64,000 nucleotides of DNA, taken from positions 40,610,001 through 40,674,000 of the forward strand of contig NC_043009.1 of assembly GCF_006345805.1 (NCBI RefSeq). Direction: 5' to 3'. Made by a program: the position numbers and the translations under genes. The stretch is from Octopus sinensis. Its lineage: Eukaryota. Under the pieces are notes generated by a model that worked only from the letters and a program-made list of their open reading frames with translations, had not been told where the DNA came from and did no database searches. Shown piece by piece: positions 7,758-62,875 of the stretch; the first letter of the stretch is position 1; the number at the start of each line of letters is the position of its first letter.

Positions 7758-8169
7758 TTAACCAAAGTTAGGTTTACAGCCACAGAGACCATTCCTTTGC
7801 AAAACAGGCATCCACCTGGGAGGACATTTCTTTGAAGCACAAATATTAGCCGTTTTTGAAGGTTTCGTAATCTTCGGAGTTGTTTTCTTTTCAGTGGTCG
7901 TCTCTATTGTCGTTGGCATCGTCGTTGTTTTAAGACCTTCGGTGGATAGAATCTCCATCAGGAAACTTCCTTTATCAAGATCATCGGTTGACTGGCCATT
8001 GGTAATAGCAGCATCAGTTTTAGCACGTTCGGTCTGGGGTTTACCATCACTGTTTATCCTGTTAGAATCAAGCTGGTTGCTCCCTGATTTTGAAATTTCG
8101 CTTTGCTTCACAAAACTGGCATTAGCAGATGCAAAGTTAGTTCCATCATAGCCTCGGTAATGTTGGCAT
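7758..8169 (-). CDS. PVF: PVF terminal coding exon (Ser/Thr-rich linker plus small Cys module)
   Basis: ttttctctgcag|A TGC CAA..., a phase-2 entry that completes LCT|C. 412 nt open to TAA at 7758. Ends CASKKCPPRWMPVLQRNGLCGCKPNFG. Confidence 0.85.
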
Positions 8170-11970: not shown

Positions 11971-12366
11971 GGCGGTGAGCTGGCAGAAACGTTAGCTCGC
12001 TGGGCGAAATGCTTTGTGGTATTTCGTCCGCCGCTGCGTTCTGAGTTCAAATTCCGCCCAGGTCAATTTTGCCTTTCATCCTTTCGGGGTCGATAAATTA
12101 AGTACCAGTTATGCACTGGGGTCGATGTAATCGACTTACTCCGTTTGTCTGTTCTTGTTTGTCCTCTCTGTGTTTAGCCCCTTGTGGGTAATAAAGAAAT
12201 AGGTATTTTGTCTGTCTTTATGTTCTGAGTTCAAATTCCGCCCAGGTCGACTTTGCCTTTTATCCTTTCGAGGTCGATAACTTAAGTACCAGTTGCGTAT
12301 TGGAGTCGATCTAATCGACTGGTCCTCTTCCCCCAAAATTTCGGGCCTTGTGCCTAGAGCAGAAAC
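11971..12366 (+). mobile_element. Dimeric SINE family B with 18-bp TSD
   Basis: TSD gaattacgtcatgtttta at 11953-11970 and 12367-12384. Confidence 0.9.
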
Positions 12367-13115: not shown

Positions 13116-13408
13116 GTGCAAAGAATTTTATTAAAGTACAGACCATGTCCACAAGCTTTTAATTTTGGACATGTGCAGCGACAAGTCTTCTTGTTCCAGG
13201 TCTTAGGATGTGTACATCTGGTATTTAAAGACGGTTTGCAGCGACAGGAGCAATCTGCAGAACTGTAGATATGTATTTTGTCATCGCAATCATCTTCTGT
13301 CACTTTGCAAACTTGTTCACAATCTGTATGTGTTTCAAGATCGATACCAACTACTCTGTCCAAAGTCATGCTTGGAGCTCCGTAATAGTCATAATTTAAC
13401 CGCACAAC
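13116..13408 (-). CDS. PVF: PDGF/VEGF domain C-terminal half plus CxCxC (Balbiani ring 3-like) repeats
   Basis: ctttag|GTT...TGC AC|gtaagt, 293 nt, phase 0 to 2. HTDCEQVCKVTEDDC...DCSCRC...WNKKTCRCTC...FNKILCT is typical of VEGF-C/D and invertebrate PVF tails. Confidence 0.93.
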
Positions 13409-13821
13409 CTAAAGGATGGAGATTGAAGAAGTTTTAGGAAACATGAATGGAGACGGAAAAGCAAACAAAAACCGAAAATAGCTCAGTGACGATAAAACAT
13501 TACTCTTTTACTCTCCTTTTTACTTGTTTCAGTCATTTGACCGCCCTTAGTTGAGCAAAGTGACCTAGTACTTTGCTCGATAGAATAAGTGACCTAGTAC
13601 TAAGTAATTAGTGAAAGCATGGTGCACGTTACCAAGTCATGGAAGTGAGAGTTGCTTATTCTTTTAAGATTTAAGCTGGCTATATCTAGCCCTAATATTC
13701 TTCACAATACTCTACATCATTCTAAAAATGAAAGAAATAATCACATCAAAATTTTGAAGTTACAATATAAGGCATAATTGGTTCAAAACGATGTAAATAA
13801 ATAAGCATTGCATGTGATATG

Positions 13822-14150
13822 TGAAGGCATATAGCTCTATAGTTGGAGCATCAGACTCACAATCATGAGGTTGTGAGTTCGATTCCCAGCCCAGACTGTG
13901 TGTTGTGTTCTTGAGCAAGACACTTTATTTCACATTGCTCTAATTCATTCGGCTGTAGAAATGAGTTATGACGTCACTGGTGCCAAGCTGAACCGGCCTT
14001 TGCCTTTCCCTTGGTTAACATCAGTGGAGTGGAGAAGCGAGGTGGTATGCATGGGCAATTACTGATCTTCCATAAACAACTCTTGCCAGGACTTGTGCCT
14101 CAGAGGGTAATTTTCTAAGTGCAATCCTCTGGTCATTAATACCACCCCCA
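13822..14150 (+). mobile_element. SINE family E in the PVF intron between the two domain exons
   Basis: Same head and body as 1995-2330. Confidence 0.85.
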
Positions 14151-14261
14151 ACACTTTTTTTTTTTTACAAATGACAGAGTAATGTGAATGCTAAAGGATT
14201 AATATGGTATCTTCTAGGTGAATGAAATTACAACAGAAGAGAGAGAGAGAAGAGAACTTAC

Positions 14262-14449
14262 TTGTACTTTTTTAAAAACTTTTCCTTTAGCAGTGGGAAC
14301 ACAGGCAAGTGACTCGTGTTCAGAACAACCTCCACATCTTTTTACTCGGGTACATTTTGGCCAATAATACTTGTTGTATTCTGTTGGTTGAGGAATCTCT
14401 ATTGTAGTCAACCGGGGTGAGCAAAAATCAGCATTGACAATTTCATTTG
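14262..14449 (-). CDS. PVF: PDGF/VEGF domain, N-terminal half
   Basis: ttttgtag|CA...CAA|gtaagt, 188 nt, phase 1 to 0. NADFCSPRLTTIEIPQPTEYNKYYWPKCTRVKRCGGCSEHESLACVP matches the family signature CxPR...WPxCxxVxRCGGC...CVP. The symbol is family-level only. Confidence 0.93.
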
Positions 14450-15647
14450 CTACAAAAAAAAAAAAACAGAAAAAAATATGAATTTAGAAATAAGTTTACA
14501 TTGTATTACTGTTATTGTTACTTCGTTGTTGTTCTCCCATCGCTATGCTGCCAGTAAAAATATTTATTTGTGCATGTATCTTCATAAATTATTCAAAGTG
14601 AAAGTATCTGAGCTGGCAGAAGCGTTAGCACGTCGGGCGAAATGCCGAGCGGTATTTTGTCTGTCGTTACGTTGTGAATTCAATTTCCGCCGAGGTCGAC
14701 TTTGCCTTTCATCCTTTCGGGGTCGATAAATTAAGTACCAGTTACGCACTGGGGTCGATGTAATCGACTTAATCCCTTTGTCTGTCCTTGTTTGTCCCCT
14801 CTGTGTTTAGTCCCTTGTGGGTAGTAAAGAAATAAGTATCTTTTTGAAGTTTGTGTTGCATTGTCTATATGTTGATAGACACACAGTCACACAATAAATA
14901 CTTGACAACCGATGCTGGTGTATTTATGTCCCCGTAACTTAGCGGTTCGGCAGGCAAAAGAGACCGATAGAAATAAGTACTAGGCTTACAAAGAATAAGT
15001 CCTGGGGTCGATTTGCTCGAGTAAAGGCAGTGCTCCAGCATGGCCATAGTCAAATGACTGAAACAAGTAAAAGAGTATCGCCATGACTTGGCAATTTATG
15101 CCTGTATCATTTCTGTTACTCTGCAGCGAAGCGCCCACGACCCAGGTACATACGGGTAGGTGTAGAGCTGCAAGGCACGCAAGAATCTGATATTGTTCTT
15201 GATTTTGCTGTCTCTACATAATCTCAGGTCTACTGAAGCAGGTGAAGAAAACTGGATTGGCGGAAACTGTTTGGAAGCCTGCTCGGTGGACTTTCTTTGA
15301 CGTGAGAGGCAACTCTATCTTTCACTCACTTTAATTATTCAGCAGTCTAGGACTTTAGCAGAATTCACTCTGTGATAAGAATTGGGGCTACGCAACAAGA
15401 AATGACACATAACGATATCTAGTTATCCGCTATCCTTGAACCAGATCTATAATCCAAAGATTACGGATTATTAGATATTTTTGTAGCAGTAACACGTGCG
15501 TTTTGGTGACCACCTCCACCACCATCGTCATTATCATCAATCAAAGAAACATTGAAAACGTGACCAACAACTTTCCCTTCCGTGTATCTTCTCTGCAGAT
15601 GTTTTATGATTCAGGCCTTTTAAAAAACTAAACTAAATAGTATTATA

Positions 15648-16158
15648 ACTATTTCTTTACTACCCACAAGGGGCTAAACACAGAGAGGACAAACAAGGAC
15701 AGACAAACGGATTAAGACGATTATATCGACCCCAGTACGTAACTGGTACTTAATTTATCGTCCCCGAAAGGATGAAAGGCAAAGTCGACCTCGGTGGAAT
15801 TTGAACTCAGATCGTAACGGCGGACGAAATACCTATTTCTTTACTACCTACAAGGGGCTAAACACAGAGGGGACAAACAAAGACAGACAAACAGATTAAG
15901 TCGATTATATTGACCCCAATGCGTAACTGGTACTTATTTAATCGACCCCGAAAGGATGAGAGGCAAAGTCGACCTCGGCGGAATTTGAACTCACAACGTA
16001 GCGGCAGACGAAATACGGCTACGCATTTTGCCGGGCGTGCTAACGTTTCTACCAGCTCCCCTGCCTTATAAAATGAGGAACTAACCTCAGGCTGAATCGA
16101 ACTCACAAATCGACGCTTGCAGGGCTCCTTGCGAATCAGATTGGCCAAACGCTCACCT
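15648..16158 (-). mobile_element. Dimeric SINE family B with extra tRNA-like 5' head, 20-bp TSD
   Basis: TSD ctaaactaaatagtattata at 15628-15647 and 16159-16178. Confidence 0.85.
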
Positions 16159-17643: not shown

Positions 17644-17667
17644 TACTGGCATATTGGAAATCGCCAT
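17644..17667 (-). CDS. PDGF/VEGF-family growth factor, 24-nt microexon (DGDFQYAS)
   Basis: Long polypyrimidine tract, cttttcttttctctttttccctgtttttcag|ATGGCGATTTCCAATATGCCAGTA|gtaagt. Phase 1 to 1, open frame, joins the 27143 and 14449 exons in frame. Confidence 0.75.
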
Positions 17668-27142: not shown

Positions 27143-27218
27143 CGTTTACATGTAAAAACTCCTGCAAGTCTTTCAGTGATGTCAATTTGTTTACTTTTTG
27201 TCGTTCCCTTTCTGGAAC
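27143..27218 (-). CDS. PDGF/VEGF-family growth factor, propeptide exon
   Basis: ttctattgcag|GTT...AAC G|gtaagt, 76 nt, phase 0 to 1. VPERERQKVNKLTSLKDLQEFLHVN resembles the PDGF N-terminal propeptide helix (PDGF-A [24 protein letters not shown]). Confidence 0.8.
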
Positions 27219-30149: not shown

Positions 30150-30735
30150 ATCCTTTCTACTATAGGCTCAAAACTGGCGTTTATGGGGAGGGGGATAGTC
30201 GATTACATCGTCCCCCGAAAGGGTGAAAAGGCAAAGTCGACCTGATCAGAATTTGAACTTAGAACGTAAAGACGGACGAAATGCCGGTAAGTATTTGGCG
30301 CTCGGTGTGATACCGATTCTTATTTCTTTACTGCACGCAAGGAGCTACACAGAGAGGGGACAAACAAGGACAAACAAACGGATTAATTCGATTATGTCGA
30401 CCCTAGTGCGTAACTGGTACTTATTTAATCGACCCCGAAAGGATGAAAGGCAAAGTTGACCTCGGCGTAATTTGAACTCAGAACGTAGCGGCAGACGAAA
30501 TACCTATTTCTTTACTACCCACAAGGGGCTAAACACAGAGAGGACAAGTAAGGACAGACAAACGGATTAAGTCGATTATATCGAGTCCAGTGTGTAACTG
30601 GTACTTATTTAATCGTCCCCGAAAGGATGAAAGGCAAAGTCGACCTCGGCGGAATTTGAACTCAGAACGTAGCGGTAGACGAAGTACAGCTACGAATTTT
30701 GCCCGGCGCGCTAACGTTTCTGCCAGCTCATCACC
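30150..30735 (-). mobile_element. Trimeric SINE family B array
   Basis: Three successive gaaaggatgaaaggcaaagtcgacc units (plus-strand reading) with one head at about 30735. Confidence 0.8.
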
Positions 30736-31989: not shown

Positions 31990-32540
31990 AGGAACAGAGA
32001 GAAAGTGTGTGTATGTGTGTGAGCATGTGTGTGTATGTATGTGAGCGTGTGTGTGTGTATGTATGTGTGTGTGTGTGTATGTGAGCGTGTGAGTGTATGT
32101 ATGTGAGCGTGTGAGTGTGTGTGTATGTGGATGCGCGTGTATGTGAGCGTATGTGTGTGTGAACGTGTGTGTGTGAGCGTGTGTGTATGTATGTGAGCAT
32201 GTTTGTGTATGTATGTGAGCATGTGTGTGTATGTATGTGACCATGTGTGTGTATGTATGTGACCATGTGTGTGTATTATGTGAGCGTGTGTGTATATGTG
32301 TGTGTGTGAGAGAGAGCGTGTGAACATGTATGTGAGCGTGTGAGTGTGTGTGTGTATGTGAGCGCATGTGTGTGTGTGTACGTGTTAGAGTGAGTACGTC
32401 TGAGAGCGTGTACATGTTAGAGCGTCTATGTGTGAGTGTGTGTGTGTCTGTATATGTGTGAATATGGGTGTGTATGCATGTACGTGTGAGTGTATGTGTG
32501 TATGAGTGTGGGTAGGTGTGAGTGTGGGTAGGTGTGAGTG
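31990..32540. repeat. Compound (GT/ATGT/GAGC) microsatellite
   Basis: Low-complexity block. It explains the His/Thr-rich spurious ORFs. Confidence 0.95.
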
Positions 32541-33245
32541 TGGGAGTGTGTCTATGTATGGGGAGGGGGGTAAATGGGTGTGAGTGTGCGAAAGAGAAGT
32601 TGAAGAATTGGGGTGGAGGTGATGGGGTTTTTAAAACTAAAGCAAAATTGTTATTGATTGGTTATTTTAGAATAAATTAATTTGAAAACTAAAGACTGGC
32701 GGCAAAAACAAAAACGATAAGTAATGAAATTAGTAAGGTCATTATTATCTTAAAATTGTATCGTGTGTATATATGTGTGATACAAAGTAATGTGCACGTA
32801 ATTGAGAAATCAAGAAGTAGAGAACCTATACATGAAGTATATAAGGCGCGGTTGTGTGGAGCTGGCCGAGACGTTAGCGCGCCGGGAGAAATGCTTAACA
32901 GTATTTCATCTGCCACTGCGTTCTGAGTTCAAATTCCGTCGAGGTCGACTTTGCCTTTCATCCTTTCGGGGTCGATAAATTAAGTACCAGTTACGCACTG
33001 GGGGGGGGTCGATCTAATCGACTTAATCCCTTTGTCTGTCCTTGTTTGTCCCCTCTATGTTTAGCTCCTTGTGGGCAATAAAGAAATAAGAAGCTTGCTT
33101 CCCAAACACAGGTTTCTAGGTTCAGTCCCACTGCAGTGGCACCTTGGGCAAATGTCTTCTACTATAGCCTCGGACCGACCAAACCTTGTGAGTGGATTTG
33201 GTAGAAGAAAACTGAAAAGAAAACCGTTGTGTGTGCATGTGTGTG

Positions 33246-33314
<69 letters not shown>

Positions 33315-33950
33315 TGTGTGTGTGTGTGTGTGTGTGCGCATTTGTTATTGTGCTCACGAGCGTAAGGTCGTGAGGTCAATTCCCGGTGACACGTCACGTT
33401 GTGTCCTTAAGCAAGTTACTTTATTTCACGTTGCTCCAGTCCACTCAGCTGGCAAAAAATGAGTAGTACCTATATTTCGAAGGACCAGCCTTGTCACGCT
33501 GAATCTCCCTGAGAACTACGTTAAGGGTACACGTGTCTGTGGAGTGGTCAGCCATTTGCACTTTAATTTCACGTGCAAGCTCATCGTAAGGTAAATACCA
33601 TGTGTGATATCCAGACTATAGTGGAAAACGTGAGCCACTGGATTTGGTTAGTAATAGCTAGAAGAATATTGAGCGAAACCTGATAACTAGTTGATCTAGC
33701 AAGCGGAACCTCATTTCTGTGAGTAGGGTTGGTGCGCAATGATGCCATCGAGAGGTGGGCCCCGAAACGGCGCGCATTCTCTTCTGATGACCCCATAAAC
33801 TTATTAGCATCCGGTATGCAGAATTTTCAACTGGTAACATTTGCATCTGCAAGTTGTTTGCAAAAGAAAATCTACGTGATCTTAATAACTCTCCACAAAT
33901 TGCGACAAATGTAAACAAACTATTGTTTGTTTTAGAAGCGCTGAAATGTA

Positions 33951-52295: not shown

Positions 52296-52383
<88 letters not shown>

Positions 52384-52474
52384 CTTCTTCCCTTCTTTCC
52401 TGAGCGTCCAATACTACTTTATTTGTTCCACGTCCTTGCGTTGTTGTTTTTTGTTTTCTTGTTTGGATTGACTT

Positions 52475-52516
<42 letters not shown>

Positions 52517-52797
52517 TATAAACAGATAGATAGATAGATAGGTAGATATACATATATACACACATATATATATATATATACACATAAATATGTACATATA
52601 TATATATGCACACATATATATACATATATATACACACATATATACACATATATATACACACACACATATATATATATATACATATATATATACACACATA
52701 TATATACATATATATATACACACACACATATAAATATATATATACACACACATATAAATATATATATATACACACATATGTATATATATATATATAT

Positions 52798-52831
<34 letters not shown>

Positions 52832-53245
52832 ATTATAACAATATATATATATATATCTATAGGCGCAGGAGTGGCTGTGTGGTAAGTAGCTTGCTAACCA
52901 ACCACATGGTTCTGGGTTCAGTCCCACTGCGTGGCATCTTAGGCAAGTGTCTTCTGCTATAACCCCGGGCCGACCAATGCCTTGTGAATGGATTTGGTAG
53001 ACGGAAACTGAAAGAAGCCTGTCGTATATATGTATATATATATATGTATGTGTGTGTGTGTTTGTGTGTCTGTGTTTGACACACAATGCTGGTGTGTTTA
53101 CGTCCCCGTCACTTAGCGGTTCGGCAAAAGAGACGGATAGAATAAGTATTGGGCTTACAAAGAATAAGTCCTGGGGTCGATTTGCTCGACTAAAGGCGAT
53201 GCTCCAGCATGGCTGCAGTTAAATGACTGAAACAAGTAAAAGAGT

Positions 53246-53315
<70 letters not shown>

Positions 53316-54026
53316 TACAACATATATATATTTACACATACATATATATACATATAAATATAAACAAATATATACAAACATATGTACATATATATATACA
53401 TACACACATACATATACATATACACACATACATACATATACATACATATATGCATACAAACATATGTATGCATATATATACATACATTTACATATACATA
53501 CATACACATATGTACATGCATGTATATATATACAAGCACACAGACATATATATATATACATACATATACATATATATACATGCATGTATATATATACAAA
53601 CACACACATATGTATATACATGCATATACATACACATATATATATACATGCATATACATATATATATATACATACATATATATATATACATACATATATA
53701 CATACATATATACATACATATATACATACATATACATACATATATATATATACATACATATATACATACATATATACATACATATACATACATATACATA
53801 TATATATATACATACATATATACATACATATACATATATTCATACATATACACACATACATACATATACATACATATATGCATACAAACATATGTATACA
53901 TATATATACATACATTTACATATACATACATACACATATATACATGCATGTATATATATACAAGCACACAGACATATATATATACATACATATATACATA
54001 TATATACATGCATGTATGTATATACT

Positions 54027-54057
<31 letters not shown>

Positions 54058-54360
54058 CATACATATACATATATATATACATGCATATACATACACATAT
54101 ATATACATGCATATACATACACATATATATATACATGCTTATACATATATATATACATACAGACATACACATATATATATATACATGCATATACATATAC
54201 ATACATATACATATACATACATATACATATATATATACATATATTCATACATACATATACATATATATATACATATACATATATTCATACCTATATACAC
54301 ATATATACAAATACATATAATATATAGACATACACAAATACATATATACACACAATACAT
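52285..54360. repeat. Large compound (TA/CA/TACA) microsatellite field interrupted by a family A SINE
   Basis: Low-complexity sequence. Source of the 100-300 aa Y/I/H/T ORFs. Confidence 0.95.
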
Positions 54361-55260
54361 ACGTACATTAGGTTCTCCGAAGCACATGTCAAGTTGTTTT
54401 TCACTGTAAAACGTTGACCCTGTTTGAAAGAGAACTTCGATCCTTCAATTAGGTTAACGCATATACCACTGATAGGTCTTCCGCATTTTTTTACTGACGG
54501 CTTCAGTGTTGTTGTCGAGTGTACTTGGGCTTGTGTTAGGAAACTTTTCACAGATTTGGGTTGTCTTTTACTCCTTATAGTGTGCGTTTGGAGGATAAAA
54601 TTCACACTGTGGTCCCATTTTAGTAAAGGATTGCTCTGGAGGATGGTGCCGAAGGCTTCATTGTTAAGAGGATTGTGTGGAGAGATGTATGGTAGAGCTT
54701 TTGGTTGTAAATCCTTCTTTAATTTGGGAAGCCTGAGTTCGTGGATGTTGAGTTGTAGGGCACATTGAAAGCCTATATCAATTAGTGATGGTGGGTAGTT
54801 CCTGGCAATGAGTGTATCCTTAATTCAAGTAGTCGTGTGTTTCTGGTGCTAGTATTAGAAACTATAGTACAAATCCTCTTTGCTAGGTTGAAATGGATAT
54901 TCATTCTAGTGTGTCTGGGGTGGCATGTCTCAATGGACGGTATACTATATAACTCTAGTACTATCCATATTAGAAGACACAACATATGAAAAGTCCAACA
55001 CCACAGTCAGCAGAATATAATGAGAAACCTAAAATCTATGCTGAACCTATACAGAGAAGGGCTCACTGACAAGGAATACGATTATATGACTAACTTCAAA
55101 AGTAAATCCAGGAAAATCCAAGAAATAAACCAAATTCATCAAAAAGACATTTGAACAGAATGCGATGGATGTGTATAATGATGAACTGAACGCTATTACG
55201 TAATTTTTGTTTTTGTTTTTTTTGAAAACCGTTTGAGGATATAACGTTAAAAGTAACATA
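54360..55260 (-). mobile_element. Penelope-like element fragment (RT thumb to start of GIY-YIG endonuclease)
   Basis: CHPRHTRMNIHFNLAKRICTIVS...RLLEL and KKCGRP...[27 protein letters not shown], with frameshifts. Confidence 0.82.
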
Positions 55261-55779: not shown

Positions 55780-56234
55780 TTAGATAGATAGATATATGTA
55801 TATAGATAGATAGATATATATACATACATACATATATACATATATACATACATACATACATACACATATATAAATAAATTAAGTACCAGTTACGCACTGG
55901 GGTCGATTACATCGACCTAATCACTTTGTCTTTGTTTGTCCCCTCTATGTTTAATCCCTTGTGGGCAATAAAGAAATATATATATACATACATACATATA
56001 TACATACATACACATATACATACATATATAAACATACATAAATGCATGCATACATAAACACACATACATAGATGTACAGACATAACATGCACGCATGTGC
56101 ATGTATGTGTATGTATATGTATGTGTATCTAGGTGTATGTATATGTATGTATGTATTTATGTATATATGTATGTAGTATATATATATATATATATGTATA
56201 AATATATGTGCATATGTATATATATGTGTGTATA

Positions 56235-56267
<33 letters not shown>

Positions 56268-56367
56268 ACATGTATACATACATGTACACATACATATGTG
56301 CATGTGTACATATACACATACATAGATATACATACACATATATACACACATACATATACTTACATGC

Positions 56368-56399
<32 letters not shown>

Positions 56400-56765
56400 A
56401 TATACATACTTAATAGTAAACTTGATTATTAGTATGTGTAGTTGAATATGGTTTCGTAAAGTGTACATGTTCAACTCCTAGAACGCTATGACCAGGTGTT
56501 TTAACAGGTACTCAAACACTCAAAAGTGGTTGTGATATATCTCGACTTTGCAAAGTCTGTAGATAAATTCTATTAGGAAATGATATGTCAAACTGATATA
56601 TATATATATATATATATACGTACATACATATGTGTATACATATACATATATACGCACATATGTGTATACGTATATAAATACATATGTATATACATACACA
56701 CATATATATGTATATACATATATACATACATATGTATGTACATATACATATATAAATACATATAA
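55780..56765. repeat. Compound microsatellites with SINE and LINE fragments
   Basis: TA/TACA/TAGA runs. Confidence 0.9.
56430..56600 (+). mobile_element. LINE reverse-transcriptase fragment
   Basis: YGFRK...VVIYLDFAKS motif with stops and frameshifts. Confidence 0.7.
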
Positions 56766-56789
56766 GGAGAAAAGTTCGTTTCATGTCAA

Positions 56790-57402
56790 AAACAGTGAAT
56801 GAAAATCCTGAACAAACTTTAAAACCCAGCAGAGAAAGATGTTATTTGATTCTTCTCAGATGAGAAAGAAATTTAATCAAGATCAGAAAGTAAACAGAAG
56901 AAATGACAGATGGCTATGTACAGGCCCTTCGGTAAGTTCTAAGAGTAATTAATACAAATTTTCCTGCAACTGTCATGGTTTTGGGGGTTGTCTGCAATGA
57001 AGGACATGTGATGCCTCCTCACTTCTTTCCACAAAGTCTTCGAGGAAACTGCTGCCTACATAGATGTTCTGAATTCAGTGGTTAAGACATGAATCGATAA
57101 TGTACGCAACGGAAGACCTTATATGTTTCAACAAGATTTGGCTCTAGGTTATAGCAATGCAAGAATGGATGGCAAAAAATTTCCATGACCACATAACCCC
57201 TAATATTTGAGCTCCTAGCTCCCCAGATCTCAATCCATTAGACTACTATGTATGGAGCGTAGTTGAGAAAGAGGTTAATGAGAACTCTCACAACATCAAA
57301 GAATCCCTAAAGGCCTCCATAGTGATAGAAATGTCCAATATGAACACAGACCACTTGAGCCTAGCCGCTATTGAAGCTGAAGGAGACTTTATTGAATAAA
57401 AT
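56790..57402 (+). mobile_element. Tc1/mariner DD37D (maT-like) transposase fragment
   Basis: Across frameshifts: FSDEK-FNQDQKVNRRNDRW, PATVMVLGVVCNEG, MFQQD, SSPDLNPLDYYVWSVVE. Confidence 0.8.
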
Positions 57403-62445: not shown

Positions 62446-62875
62446 TGTGTGTGTGTGTGTGTATAGTATGTAGATGTCAGTGAAGGACTAATTAATGCTA
62501 AAATAAAAAGAAGGAAACATGAAGCAAACGAGAAATGGTAATTAACAAGTAATTAAAAAAAAAAGGAAATAAATGTTGAAATACCTGCGTCTTTGACAAT
62601 GTGATCGTTCCAGTAAGCGATAGAAGCAGAAAAAATAACTTTAGGCCCATCGCGTGTGCGTTTGTGTGTGTATTGCAGTTAACTTATTGATAAGAGTCGC
62701 AAGGTGGGTATACACACTTCTCACGTAGTAACAGTTAAATGGTATAGAAAAAGTTGTCAAATGGAAATTGAATATTTACACTAATCTCTTGTCACGTGAT
62801 AGCAATTTACGCTTTCATTGGTTTAAGTTAGTCGCGATTTAGTGAAAAAGTTTAGTCGGCAGAGATTTTTCTTAC

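What the first reader, a model, noticed from the sequence alone, without database searches (positions are those of the whole stretch)
13307..14330. PDGF/VEGF ligand that has lost both cysteines of one cystine-knot disulfide
Seen: the domain reads ...PKC-TRVKRC-GGC-S-EHESLAC... and ...HTDC-E-Q-VC..., against VEGF-A [20 protein letters not shown] and HNKC-E-C. Spacing is exact, so the C61 equivalent is Ser (TCT, 14322-14324) and the C104 equivalent is Gln (CAA, 13313-13315). Established: C61-C104 is one of the two ring disulfides of the VEGF knot, and invertebrate PVFs normally keep RCxGCC and HxxCxCxC. Inference: the two changes lie in different exons and hit exactly a bonded pair, and CAA is three substitutions from a Cys codon. 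This argues for a fixed paired loss rather than sequencing error or decay. The other six core cysteines, including both interchain ones, and all splice sites are intact. The result would be a naturally un-knotted growth factor, possibly with altered receptor specificity or a decoy role.
Basis: partly seen in the sequence, partly recalled or inferred. Interest (0 to 1): 0.82.

Follow-up and report, generated by a model that had tools for sequence, protein, structure and literature searches.

The report
Octopus VEGF-like ligand lacking one knot disulfide
The octopus's main VEGF/PDGF-type growth-factor gene really has lost both cysteines of one cystine-knot disulfide and is still a working, conserved gene. 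The loss is old and widespread in molluscs and some other invertebrates, so it is not an octopus oddity.

Summary
The window holds the whole 6-exon gene for Octopus sinensis "vascular endothelial growth factor D" (XP_029644415.1, 352 aa, minus strand). Its PDGF/VEGF domain reads RCGGC-S (TCT 14324-14322) and HTDC-E-Q-V-C (CAA 13315-13313).

The change is fixed and the gene is functional:
- O. vulgaris and O. bimaculoides have Ala/Gln at the two positions; cuttlefish mRNAs have Ser/Glu.
- dN/dS is 0.06-0.17.
- AlphaFold2 predicts an intact VEGF fold (pLDDT 95).

It is not special to cephalopods. In 148 relatives, 18 other cysteine columns are almost invariant and only these two vary:
- 114 are canonical, 19 lost both cysteines, 15 lost only C104, and none lost only C61.
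- Every named mollusc lacks C104 (gastropods, bivalves, a chiton, cephalopods).
- A bryozoan, a horseshoe crab and a planthopper lost the pair independently.

Cysteine parity and the strict order (C104 first, then the orphaned C61) support a true bonded-pair loss. They do not fit loss of an interchain cysteine.

A canonical probe found no other gene of this type in the genome, so a decoy role is unlikely. Precedents are the engineered VEGF-A C61A/C104A (PDB 1MKK) and chordate IL-17. I found no paper describing this pattern. Interest is moderate.

The parts
62585..62650 (-). Coding exon 1: ATG (62650-62648) and signal peptide MGLKLFFLLLSLTGTITLSKTQ
   Evidence: tblastn and exact splice reconstruction of P0151; GT donor
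27143..27218 (-). Coding exon 2: N-terminal propeptide (VPERERQKVNKLTSLKDLQEFLHVN)
   Evidence: AG acceptor and GT donor
17644..17667 (-). Coding exon 3: 24-nt micro-exon (DGDFQYAS)
   Evidence: AG acceptor and GT donor
14262..14449 (-). Coding exon 4: first half of the PDGF/VEGF homology domain. Cys equivalents: C26 (14423-14421), C51 (14354-14352), C57 (14336-14334), C60 (14327-14325), C68 (14303-14301)
   Evidence: donor gtaagt at 14261
14322..14324 (-). Ser98 codon TCT at the C61-equivalent position (GCT = Ala in O. vulgaris and O. bimaculoides; TCA/TCG = Ser in the cuttlefish-type orthologues)
13116..13408 (-). Coding exon 5: second half of the homology domain (C102 equivalent 13321-13319), followed directly by BR3P/CXCXC repeats 1-3
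   Evidence: (PF03128, 18.8 bits against a cut-off of 15)
13313..13315 (-). Gln150 codon CAA at the C104-equivalent position (CAA in all three octopuses; GAG/GAA = Glu in cuttlefish-type orthologues)
13307..13309 (-). Cys152 codon TGC, the retained third Cys of the ancestral CxCxC ('C106' position). It is kept in all 147 relatives aligned; only the L002 paralogue of this genome lacks it
7758..8169 (-). Coding exon 6: last Cys of BR3P repeat 3, a Ser/Asn/Thr-rich linker (Thr-rich part 7949-7851), the terminal 4-Cys motif CASKKCPPRW...GLCGC (7841-7776) and the stop TAA (7760-7758)
   Evidence: the same tail motif occurs in P0002, P0169, P0005, P0007 and P0008

Best explanation
This is the Octopus sinensis orthologue of the main protostome PDGF/VEGF-like factor (PVF). 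Its architecture is VEGF-C/D-like: signal peptide, short propeptide, VEGF homology domain, three BR3P (CXCXC) repeats, a Thr-rich linker and a terminal 4-Cys motif.

The ring disulfide that corresponds to VEGF-A C61-C104 has simply been deleted by substitution (Ser/Ala and Gln/Glu). All other cysteines keep their ancestral partners:
- C26-C68 and C57-C102 within the chain.
- C51-C60' between chains.
- The third CxCxC cysteine paired into the BR3P region.

Without the second ring bond there is no closed ring for C26-C68 to thread, so the domain is a VEGF fold without a topological knot. It is still most likely a disulfide-linked dimer and the normal ligand of the cephalopod PVR/VEGFR, not a decoy.

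Historically, C104 was lost first. This may have happened once in an early mollusc. It left C61 as an orphan thiol, which limpets, abalone, clams and sea slugs still carry. The orphan was then removed repeatedly, including before octopuses and cuttlefish split.

What is shown: the sequence state, its conservation, purifying selection, transcription in cuttlefish, the family-wide pattern and a confident fold prediction. What is inferred: the disulfide map, the dimer, receptor binding and tolerance to loss of the knot. The tolerance is argued by analogy to engineered VEGF-A C61A/C104A.
For: - Gene and codons. Family membership: Pfam PDGF E=5.4e-15 and CXCXC repeat.
- Identity of the product: XP_029644415.1 on the 72,296,471-bp contig that holds the window.
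- Octopus orthologues: O. vulgaris and O. bimaculoides carry GCT/CAA. NG86 omega for O. sinensis against O. bimaculoides is 0.16 overall and 0.09 in the homology domain plus BR3P (26 synonymous and 16 non-synonymous changes).
- Cuttlefish orthologue P0169 reads KCGGCS...HTDCVEEC. It sits on intron-less contigs from 125 run assemblies, including Sepia esculenta larval RNA-seq runs. P0002 against P0169 gives dS 0.92 and omega 0.17, or 0.064 in the core.
- Family pattern: 114 canonical, 19 both lost, 15 only C104 lost, 0 only C61 lost. C51, C57, C60, C68 and C102 are invariant in 148 of 148, C106 is present in 147 (all but this genome's L002 paralogue), and C26 is present wherever that column is covered.
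- Parity of total Cys: 18 of 19 both-lost proteins are even, and 11 of 15 only-C104-lost proteins are odd.
- Tree: a 25-row gastropod and bivalve clade is entirely C104-less. Starred branches force at least 5 origins of the pair loss.
- Holding all C104-less mollusc rows as one clade is not rejected, and that tree has the higher likelihood (p-AU 0.94).
- A genome search with a canonical PVF finds only this gene.
- The AF2 model has mean pLDDT 95.4. It superposes on PDGF-B and VEGF-A/B/C at TM about 0.65-0.73, normalised to the target.
- Engineered VEGF-A C61A/C104A crystallises (1MKK). Removing single disulfides does not lower thermodynamic stability (review PMC3328748).
Against: - No disulfide was mapped, and I could not read model coordinates. 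The pairing of the seven remaining homology-domain cysteines is therefore inferred.
- AF2 was given an alignment made mostly of canonical sequences, so it would return the family fold regardless.
- I found no octopus transcript in the collections. Expression evidence comes from cuttlefish only.
- The list of 150 relatives was seeded with a pair-loss query, so the frequencies are biased.
- The taxa of most canonical rows are unknown, so a canonical BR3P-type PVF elsewhere in molluscs is not excluded.
- The tree is a quick search on 178 columns with many open forks, and the mollusc clade was named after the tree had been seen.
- The own-genome search scores only the best candidates.
Confidence: 0.75

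Rival explanations
1. Rewired knot. The remaining cysteines re-pair, for example C60 (or C61 in the intermediate forms) with the retained third Cys of CxCxC. This would give a new 9- or 10-residue ring with C57-C102. A knot-like topology would survive, while the interchain bond, and perhaps covalent dimerisation, would be lost.
For: The third Cys lies only two residues beyond the lost one and is kept in all 147 relatives. Fifteen sequences keep GGCC but have CxXxC, which could mean that C61 can use the +2 cysteine. The literature reads missing cysteines in protostome PVFs as interchain ones and admits alignment ambiguity (PMC10328876).
Against: The third Cys is just as invariant in the 114 canonical sequences, so it already has a partner outside the knot. 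Most only-C104-lost proteins have an odd Cys count, as expected for an orphan C61 rather than a re-pairing. C51 is invariant in 148 of 148, although it would be orphaned if C60 moved into the ring. C61 is never lost unless C104 is gone, which marks those two as partners.
Confidence: 0.12
2. One reading: the un-knotted protein is a decoy or antagonist, or has a changed receptor specificity, rather than being the normal agonist.
For: The lost Cys61 position opens the loop (61-68 in VEGF-A) that contributes receptor contacts in VEGF-A; that role is from my own knowledge. A second PVF gene with an intact knot exists on the same chromosome (L002).
Against: A genome search with a canonical family member found no other BR3P-type PVF. 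The state is shared by all named molluscs and is hundreds of millions of years old. Purifying selection is strong on the homology domain. An oyster VEGF PDGF domain binds its VEGFR in vitro (PMC12468279), although I did not check which oyster paralogue that was.
Confidence: 0.08
3. Artefact or decay: sequencing or assembly error, or a pseudogene.
For: None found. O. sinensis differs from its congeners at codon 98 (TCT against GCT), which alone could be an error or a polymorphism.
Against: Three independent octopus assemblies and many cuttlefish RNA-seq assemblies agree on non-Cys residues at both sites. The reading frame and all splice sites are intact. Omega is 0.06-0.17.
Confidence: 0.01

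Closest known systems
Invertebrate PVFs and vertebrate VEGF-C/VEGF-D (PDGF/VEGF family with C-terminal BR3P repeats)
   Same: PDGF/VEGF homology domain (Pfam PF00341). BR3P/CXCXC repeats follow directly after it. There is a signal peptide and a propeptide. Both interchain cysteines and four of the six knot cysteines are present. The predicted fold superposes on VEGF-C, VEGF-A/B and PDGF-B. NCBI already names it VEGF-D.
   Different: It lacks the C61-C104 ring disulfide that belongs to the family's 8-cysteine signature. It has no spacer or obvious convertase site between the homology domain and the BR3P repeats, and it carries a mucin-like Thr-rich tail.
Engineered human VEGF-A C61A/C104A (PDB 1MKK; Muller et al. 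2002, J Biol Chem 277:43410)
   Same: Exactly the same disulfide is removed. 1MKK was the second-best sequence hit in the PDB and is among the fold matches. The mutant folds and crystallises, and single disulfide removal does not lower thermodynamic stability (PMC3328748).
   Different: It is a laboratory mutant of a vertebrate protein, with Ala at both sites. From my own knowledge of the paper, its melting temperature drops by about 40 degrees C and its structure deviates by about 2.2 A. The natural protein has had a very long time to compensate, and it carries BR3P repeats.
Chordate IL-17 cytokines
   Same: A natural cystine-knot-fold family in which one knot disulfide was lost as a pair, both cysteines being replaced by serines, while invertebrate members keep it (PMC4517768). 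It shows that the fold and the signalling survive without the full knot.
   Different: It is an unrelated branch of the cystine-knot superfamily. A different disulfide of the knot is missing, and the direction across phyla is the opposite: there the chordates lost it.
Protostome PVFs reported to lack intermolecular cysteines (Drosophila PVF2, C. elegans PVF-1; Rauniyar et al. 2023)
   Same: These are protostome PVFs that break the 8-cysteine pattern. The authors argue that disulfides are less needed at low ambient temperature (PMC10328876).
   Different: There the missing cysteines are read as the interchain pair. Here both interchain cysteines are invariant, and it is a knot pair that is missing.

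Membership tests
PDGF/VEGF growth factor family | Sequence match to the PDGF/VEGF homology domain profile above the curated threshold | tested here: met
   PF00341 at 55.9 bits against a cut-off of 27, E=5.4e-15, profile positions 1-81 of 82. A genome scan with the same family finds this exon at 48.7 bits.
PDGF/VEGF growth factor family | Eight-cysteine signature, including ...R-C-x-G-C-C and C-x-C. The PROSITE-type pattern P-[PSR]-C-V-x(3)-R-C-[GSTA]-G-C-C is recalled from memory. | tested here: not met
   Six of the eight are present. The motif reads PKCTRVKRCGGCS and HTDCEQVC, and the pattern search fails.
PDGF/VEGF growth factor family | Cystine knot: two disulfides (C57-C102 and C61-C104) close a ring through which C26-C68 passes | tested here: not met
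   By sequence, both partners of the second ring bond are absent. The actual disulfide map cannot be determined with these tools.
PDGF/VEGF growth factor family | Interchain cysteines (C51 and C60 equivalents) for an antiparallel covalent dimer | tested here: met
   Cys88 and Cys97 are present, and both columns are invariant in 148 of 148 relatives. Dimer formation itself was not tested.
PDGF/VEGF growth factor family | VEGF/PDGF monomer fold (elongated four-stranded beta sheet) | tested here: met
   The AF2 model has mean pLDDT 95.4. Foldseek probability is 1.00 to PDGF-B, VEGF-A, -B and -C, with TM 0.65-0.73 normalised to the target. This is a prediction, biased by a mostly canonical alignment.
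PDGF/VEGF growth factor family | Binds and activates a PVR/VEGFR/PDGFR-class receptor tyrosine kinase | not testable with these tools
   The literature only says that octopuses possess VEGF receptors (PMC10328876).
VEGF-C/D-like (BR3P-bearing) subgroup and protostome PVFs | C-terminal BR3P repeats C-x10-C-x-C-x(1,3)-C after the homology domain | tested here: met
   PF03128 CXCXC at 18.8 bits against a cut-off of 15. Three repeats can be read directly: CDDKIHIYSSADCSCRC, CTHPKTWNKKTCRCTC and CGHGLYFNKILCTC. Their Cys columns are 90-100% conserved in relatives.

The most novel reading that the evidence does not exclude
The seven remaining homology-domain cysteines may not keep their ancestral partners. 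They could instead form a new disulfide isomer of the VEGF fold, for example Cys97 or, in the transitional forms, the C61 equivalent bonded to the retained third CxCxC cysteine. That would change dimerisation or receptor engagement. In this reading the 'GGCC + CxXxC' proteins of limpets, abalone, clams and sea slugs are living transitional forms. A whole phylum would then signal through a topologically different VEGF.
Probability: 0.12. Interest if true: 0.7.

Novelty: new variant of a known kind. Interest (0 to 1): 0.45.

Why it matters
The cystine knot is treated as the defining and indispensable core of PDGF/VEGF ligands. These data indicate that one of its ring disulfides is evolutionarily dispensable.
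- It is absent from every named molluscan sequence of this PVF type.
- It was lost independently in a bryozoan, a chelicerate and an insect.
- The order is always the same: C104 first, then the orphaned C61.

This is a natural replicate of the 2002 VEGF-A C61A/C104A experiment. It offers ready-made material (orphan-Cys intermediates and fully un-knotted forms) for asking what the knot is for: folding, heat stability or receptor geometry. It also corrects a likely misreading of protostome PVF alignments, in which missing cysteines are attributed to the interchain pair.

For cephalopod biology it identifies the only VEGF-C-like ligand found in the octopus genome, which is relevant to their closed vasculature.

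It is not a cephalopod-specific curiosity. The gene is already annotated, and precedents exist (1MKK, IL-17), so the surprise is moderate.

Tried and rejected
- The word-indexed protein search with the 161-aa two-exon fragment found nothing. Its length filter excludes the 350-aa full-length proteins.
- The same tool gave only 2 hits with full-length P0151 and 3 hits with a 52-sequence profile, so it could not supply a named-taxon survey.
- Looking up the exact O. sinensis product for transcript contigs returned nothing, possibly because own-genome records are withheld. O. vulgaris and O. bimaculoides products were found only on genome records.
Runs carrying P0169 were traced to Sepia esculenta.
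- Model coordinates are not exposed, so Cys-Cys distances could not be measured.
- The oyster VEGF paper says nothing about cysteines. Searches for a PDGF-D 'fifth cysteine' precedent gave nothing usable, so I left that comparison out.
- Rfam found nothing in the window.
- I rejected the pseudogene and sequencing-error readings, and loss of an interchain cysteine. The interchain reading fails because C51 and C60 are invariant, whereas the lost position co-varies only with C104.
- L003 (QLQCGGCCISEMLRC inside a microsatellite-like ORF, E=0.8) is treated as a chance match or a dead fragment.
Full report
**1. What is in the window**

The window is G000:C13:40610001-40674000 of a 2.72-Gb assembly with 13,516 contigs.

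On the minus strand, two open frames hold a PDGF/VEGF homology domain split by one intron. Their joined translation matches:
- Pfam PDGF (PF00341) at E=5.4e-15, 55.9 bits against a cut-off of 27.
- The CXCXC repeat family PF03128.
- In the PDB, VEGF-D, VEGF-A, VEGF-B, PDGF-A/B and VEGF-C. Its second-best hit is 1MKK, the engineered VEGF-A C61A/C104A mutant.

A whole-library HMMER search returned a 352-aa Octopus protein. Cluster look-up showed that the product on the 72,296,471-bp contig holding the window is Octopus sinensis XP_029644415.1, 'vascular endothelial growth factor D' (P0151).

I rebuilt the whole CDS inside the window as six exons, all introns GT-AG:

| Exon | Coordinates (minus strand) |
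|---|---|
| 1 | 62650-62585 |
| 2 | 27218-27143 |
| 3 | 17667-17644 |
| 4 | 14449-14262 |
| 5 | 13408-13116 |
| 6 | 8169-7758 |

The spliced CDS translates exactly to P0151.

The protein consists of:
- a signal peptide and a short propeptide,
- the homology domain,
- three BR3P repeats directly after it,
- a Ser/Asn/Thr-rich linker,
- a terminal C-x4-C...C-x-C motif that relatives share.

**2. The observation**

- Ser98 is TCT at 14324-14322, directly after the Cys of GGC.
- Gln150 is CAA at 13315-13313, between Cys148 (TGT 13321-13319) and Cys152 (TGC 13309-13307).

The equivalents of C26, C51, C57, C60, C68 and C102 are present. The ancestral C-terminal motif in this subfamily is CxCxC, so the octopus reading CEQVC keeps the first and third cysteine and has lost the middle one.

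**3. It is fixed, selected and transcribed**

Octopus genomes. I fetched the orthologous loci of O. bimaculoides (L005) and O. vulgaris (L006), and rebuilt their CDSs with the same six exons and splice sites.
- Position 104 is CAA in all three species.
- Position 61 is GCT (Ala) in both congeners and TCT (Ser) only in O. sinensis.
- That A98S change is the only non-synonymous difference between O. sinensis and O. vulgaris in the homology domain plus BR3P region.
- Nei-Gojobori omega for O. sinensis against O. bimaculoides is 0.16 overall (26 synonymous and 16 non-synonymous changes) and 0.09 in the core.

More distant orthologues. P0002/P0154 and P0169 have the same architecture and read [QK]CGGCS...HTDCVEEC.
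- P0169 is encoded on intron-less 2.4-3.4-kb contigs in 125 run assemblies.
- Two of those runs are Sepia esculenta larval RNA-seq (PMC10466719).
- P0154 lies on intron-less contigs from 14 runs.
- A related genomic contig shows the same intron position inside the domain (L017).
- Between the two decapodiform sequences dS is 0.92. Omega is 0.17 overall and 0.064 in the core. The codons are TCA/TCG (Ser) and GAG/GAA (Glu).

The pair was therefore already missing before octopuses and cuttlefish diverged. The gene is under purifying selection in both lineages and is transcribed in cuttlefish. Sequencing error and pseudogene decay are excluded.

**4. It is not peculiar to cephalopods**

I aligned the 150 best representatives, less four fragments, together with P0151 and this genome's second PVF gene (148 rows).
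- Eighteen other cysteine columns across the homology domain and BR3P repeats are invariant or nearly so.
- C51, C57, C60, C68 and C102 are present in 148 of 148.
- C106 is present in 147, the exception being the L002 paralogue.
- Only positions 61 and 104 vary.

| State at positions 61 / 104 | Sequences |
|---|---|
| Canonical (GGCC + CxCxC) | 114 |
| Both lost | 19 |
| Only C104 lost | 15 |
| Only C61 lost | 0 |

Fisher p is 4e-15 on the raw counts.

Named members with both cysteines lost:
- Bivalves: Saccostrea and Pinctada.
- Gastropods: Nucella, Babylonia (two genes) and Physella.
- Chiton: Liolophura.
- Bryozoan: Watersipora.
- Horseshoe crab: Tachypleus.
- Planthopper: Nilaparvata.

Named members with only C104 lost: Patella, Haliotis, Gigantopelta, Elysia, Plakobranchus, Ruditapes and Sinanodonta.

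Every molluscan sequence that carried a name lacks C104.

The residues that replace the cysteines differ: S/A/T/P/G/V at position 61 and Q/E/V/A/P/L/I/F at position 104. 'Ser/Gln' as such therefore means nothing.

**5. Order and number of events**

I built a maximum-likelihood tree with the two trait columns removed (147 rows, without the paralogue).
- The octopus and P0002 rows join with strong support.
- A 25-row gastropod and bivalve clade consists only of C104-less sequences, with C61 lost several times inside it.
- The bryozoan, Tachypleus, Nilaparvata and P0003 sit among canonical rows.
- Well-supported branches force at least five origins of the double loss.
- Constraining all C104-less mollusc rows (that clade plus cephalopods and the chiton) into one clade gives a tree 39.75 log-likelihood units better than the quick free search, with p-AU 0.94. 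A single early loss of C104 in molluscs is therefore compatible with the data.

Caveats: the tree rests on a quick search over 178 columns with many unresolved forks. I named the group after seeing the tree. The taxa of most canonical rows are unknown.

**6. Which bond was lost**

The literature reads missing cysteines in protostome PVFs as the intermolecular pair and notes possible alignment artefacts (PMC10328876). Three observations argue against that reading here:
- Both interchain positions are invariant, while the lost position co-varies only with C104.
- 18 of 19 double-loss proteins have an even total cysteine count, whereas 11 of 15 proteins with only C104 lost have an odd one. That is what an orphan C61 would give.
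- C61 is never lost while C104 is present.

The retained third cysteine is equally invariant in canonical proteins, so it must already have a partner outside the knot, most plausibly in the BR3P region. A rewired ring (C60 or C61 bonded to that cysteine) is not excluded. It needs disulfide mapping, and I rate it at about 0.12.

**7. Fold and function**

- AlphaFold2 on residues 56-222 with a 117-sequence alignment gave mean pLDDT 95.4.
- Foldseek matched PDGF-B, VEGF-A/B/C and 1MKK over about 90-100 residues, with TM 0.65-0.73 normalised to the target.
- The alignment is mostly canonical, so this shows compatibility with the fold. It does not prove the fold, and I could not read coordinates.

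The engineered VEGF-A disulfide mutants keep the fold, and none of the bridges adds thermodynamic stability (PMC3328748 summarising Muller et al. 2002). From my own knowledge of that paper, the melting temperature falls by about 40 degrees C and the knot is proposed to aid folding. Such a cost should matter little to a marine ectotherm. Rauniyar et al. make the same argument for interchain bonds.

Searching the O. sinensis genome with a canonical family member (P0013) returns only the two exons of this gene. The Pfam scan finds one other PVF locus, L002, 23 Mb away. L002 has an intact knot (HRCRNVTGCC and HTECEC) but no third cysteine. The un-knotted protein is therefore the only BR3P-type PVF found, which argues for an ordinary ligand role rather than a decoy.

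**8. Comparison and novelty**

- It works like, and by profile and predicted fold belongs with, protostome PVFs and VEGF-C/D. It fails the family's 8-cysteine and knot criterion.
- The closest functional precedent is the laboratory mutant 1MKK.
- The closest natural precedent is chordate IL-17, where a knot cysteine pair became two serines (PMC4517768).
- I found no paper describing loss of the C61-C104 pair in PVFs. The searchable library is incomplete, however, and the sequences themselves are public and annotated.

I classify it as a new variant of a known kind, of moderate interest.

Noticed in passing
L002 = G000:C13:63524088-63527243 (about 23 Mb from the window on the same contig); exons near L002:1480-1680 and 2481-2600, + strand: A second PDGF/VEGF-domain gene with an intact 8-cysteine pattern (…HRCKHPRPE…PSCTVIHRCRNVTGCCSNASAVC… and …HTECECKEIIKLPG). 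It has three extra residues between the C57 and C60 equivalents and no third CxCxC cysteine. The rest of the gene was not modelled.
   Followed up: partly
window 5403-61504, e.g. 14600-14810, 11976-12177, 15674-16058, 30345-30730: A SINE-like interspersed repeat of about 200 bp is present in 25 copies or fragments at 73-91% identity, on both strands and often as adjacent pairs, inside the introns of the gene. It explains the many repeated pseudo-ORFs (…FRGRLCLSSFRGR…). Rfam has no match for it.
   Followed up: partly
relatives P0020, P0033, P0038, P0046, P0049, P0053, P0059, P0061, P0074, P0076, P0089, P0097, P0115, P0136, P0149: Fifteen PVFs keep GGCC but have lost only the C104 equivalent. 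Named ones are from Patella, Haliotis, Gigantopelta, Elysia, Plakobranchus, Ruditapes and Sinanodonta. Most have an odd cysteine count, which implies a free or differently paired C61 in a secreted growth factor.
   Followed up: partly
window 14322-14324: A98S (GCT to TCT) is the only non-synonymous difference between O. sinensis and O. vulgaris in the homology domain plus BR3P region. The former cysteine site now seems free to drift among small residues.
   Followed up: yes
model m2ba3ae47ffd6, residues about 100-167 (window exon 5, 13288-13116, and 8169-8140): AlphaFold2 models the three BR3P/CXCXC repeats with pLDDT 88-98. The PDB fold matches cover only the 90-100 residues of the homology domain, so the listed matches did not extend into the repeat region.
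   Followed up: no
L003 = G000:C10260:23515-26622, minus strand near 1567-1620: An isolated …QLQCGGCCISEMLRC… stretch at the end of a microsatellite-like open frame scores E=0.8 to the PDGF profile. It is either chance or a dead exon fragment.
   Followed up: no
window 52352-54444, 55910-56841, 32000-33460 and others: Long TG/TA-rich microsatellite tracts translate into Cys/Tyr/Ile/Val-rich pseudo-ORFs in several frames. These are not coding sequence, but they can mislead a by-eye search for cysteine-rich exons.
   Followed up: no
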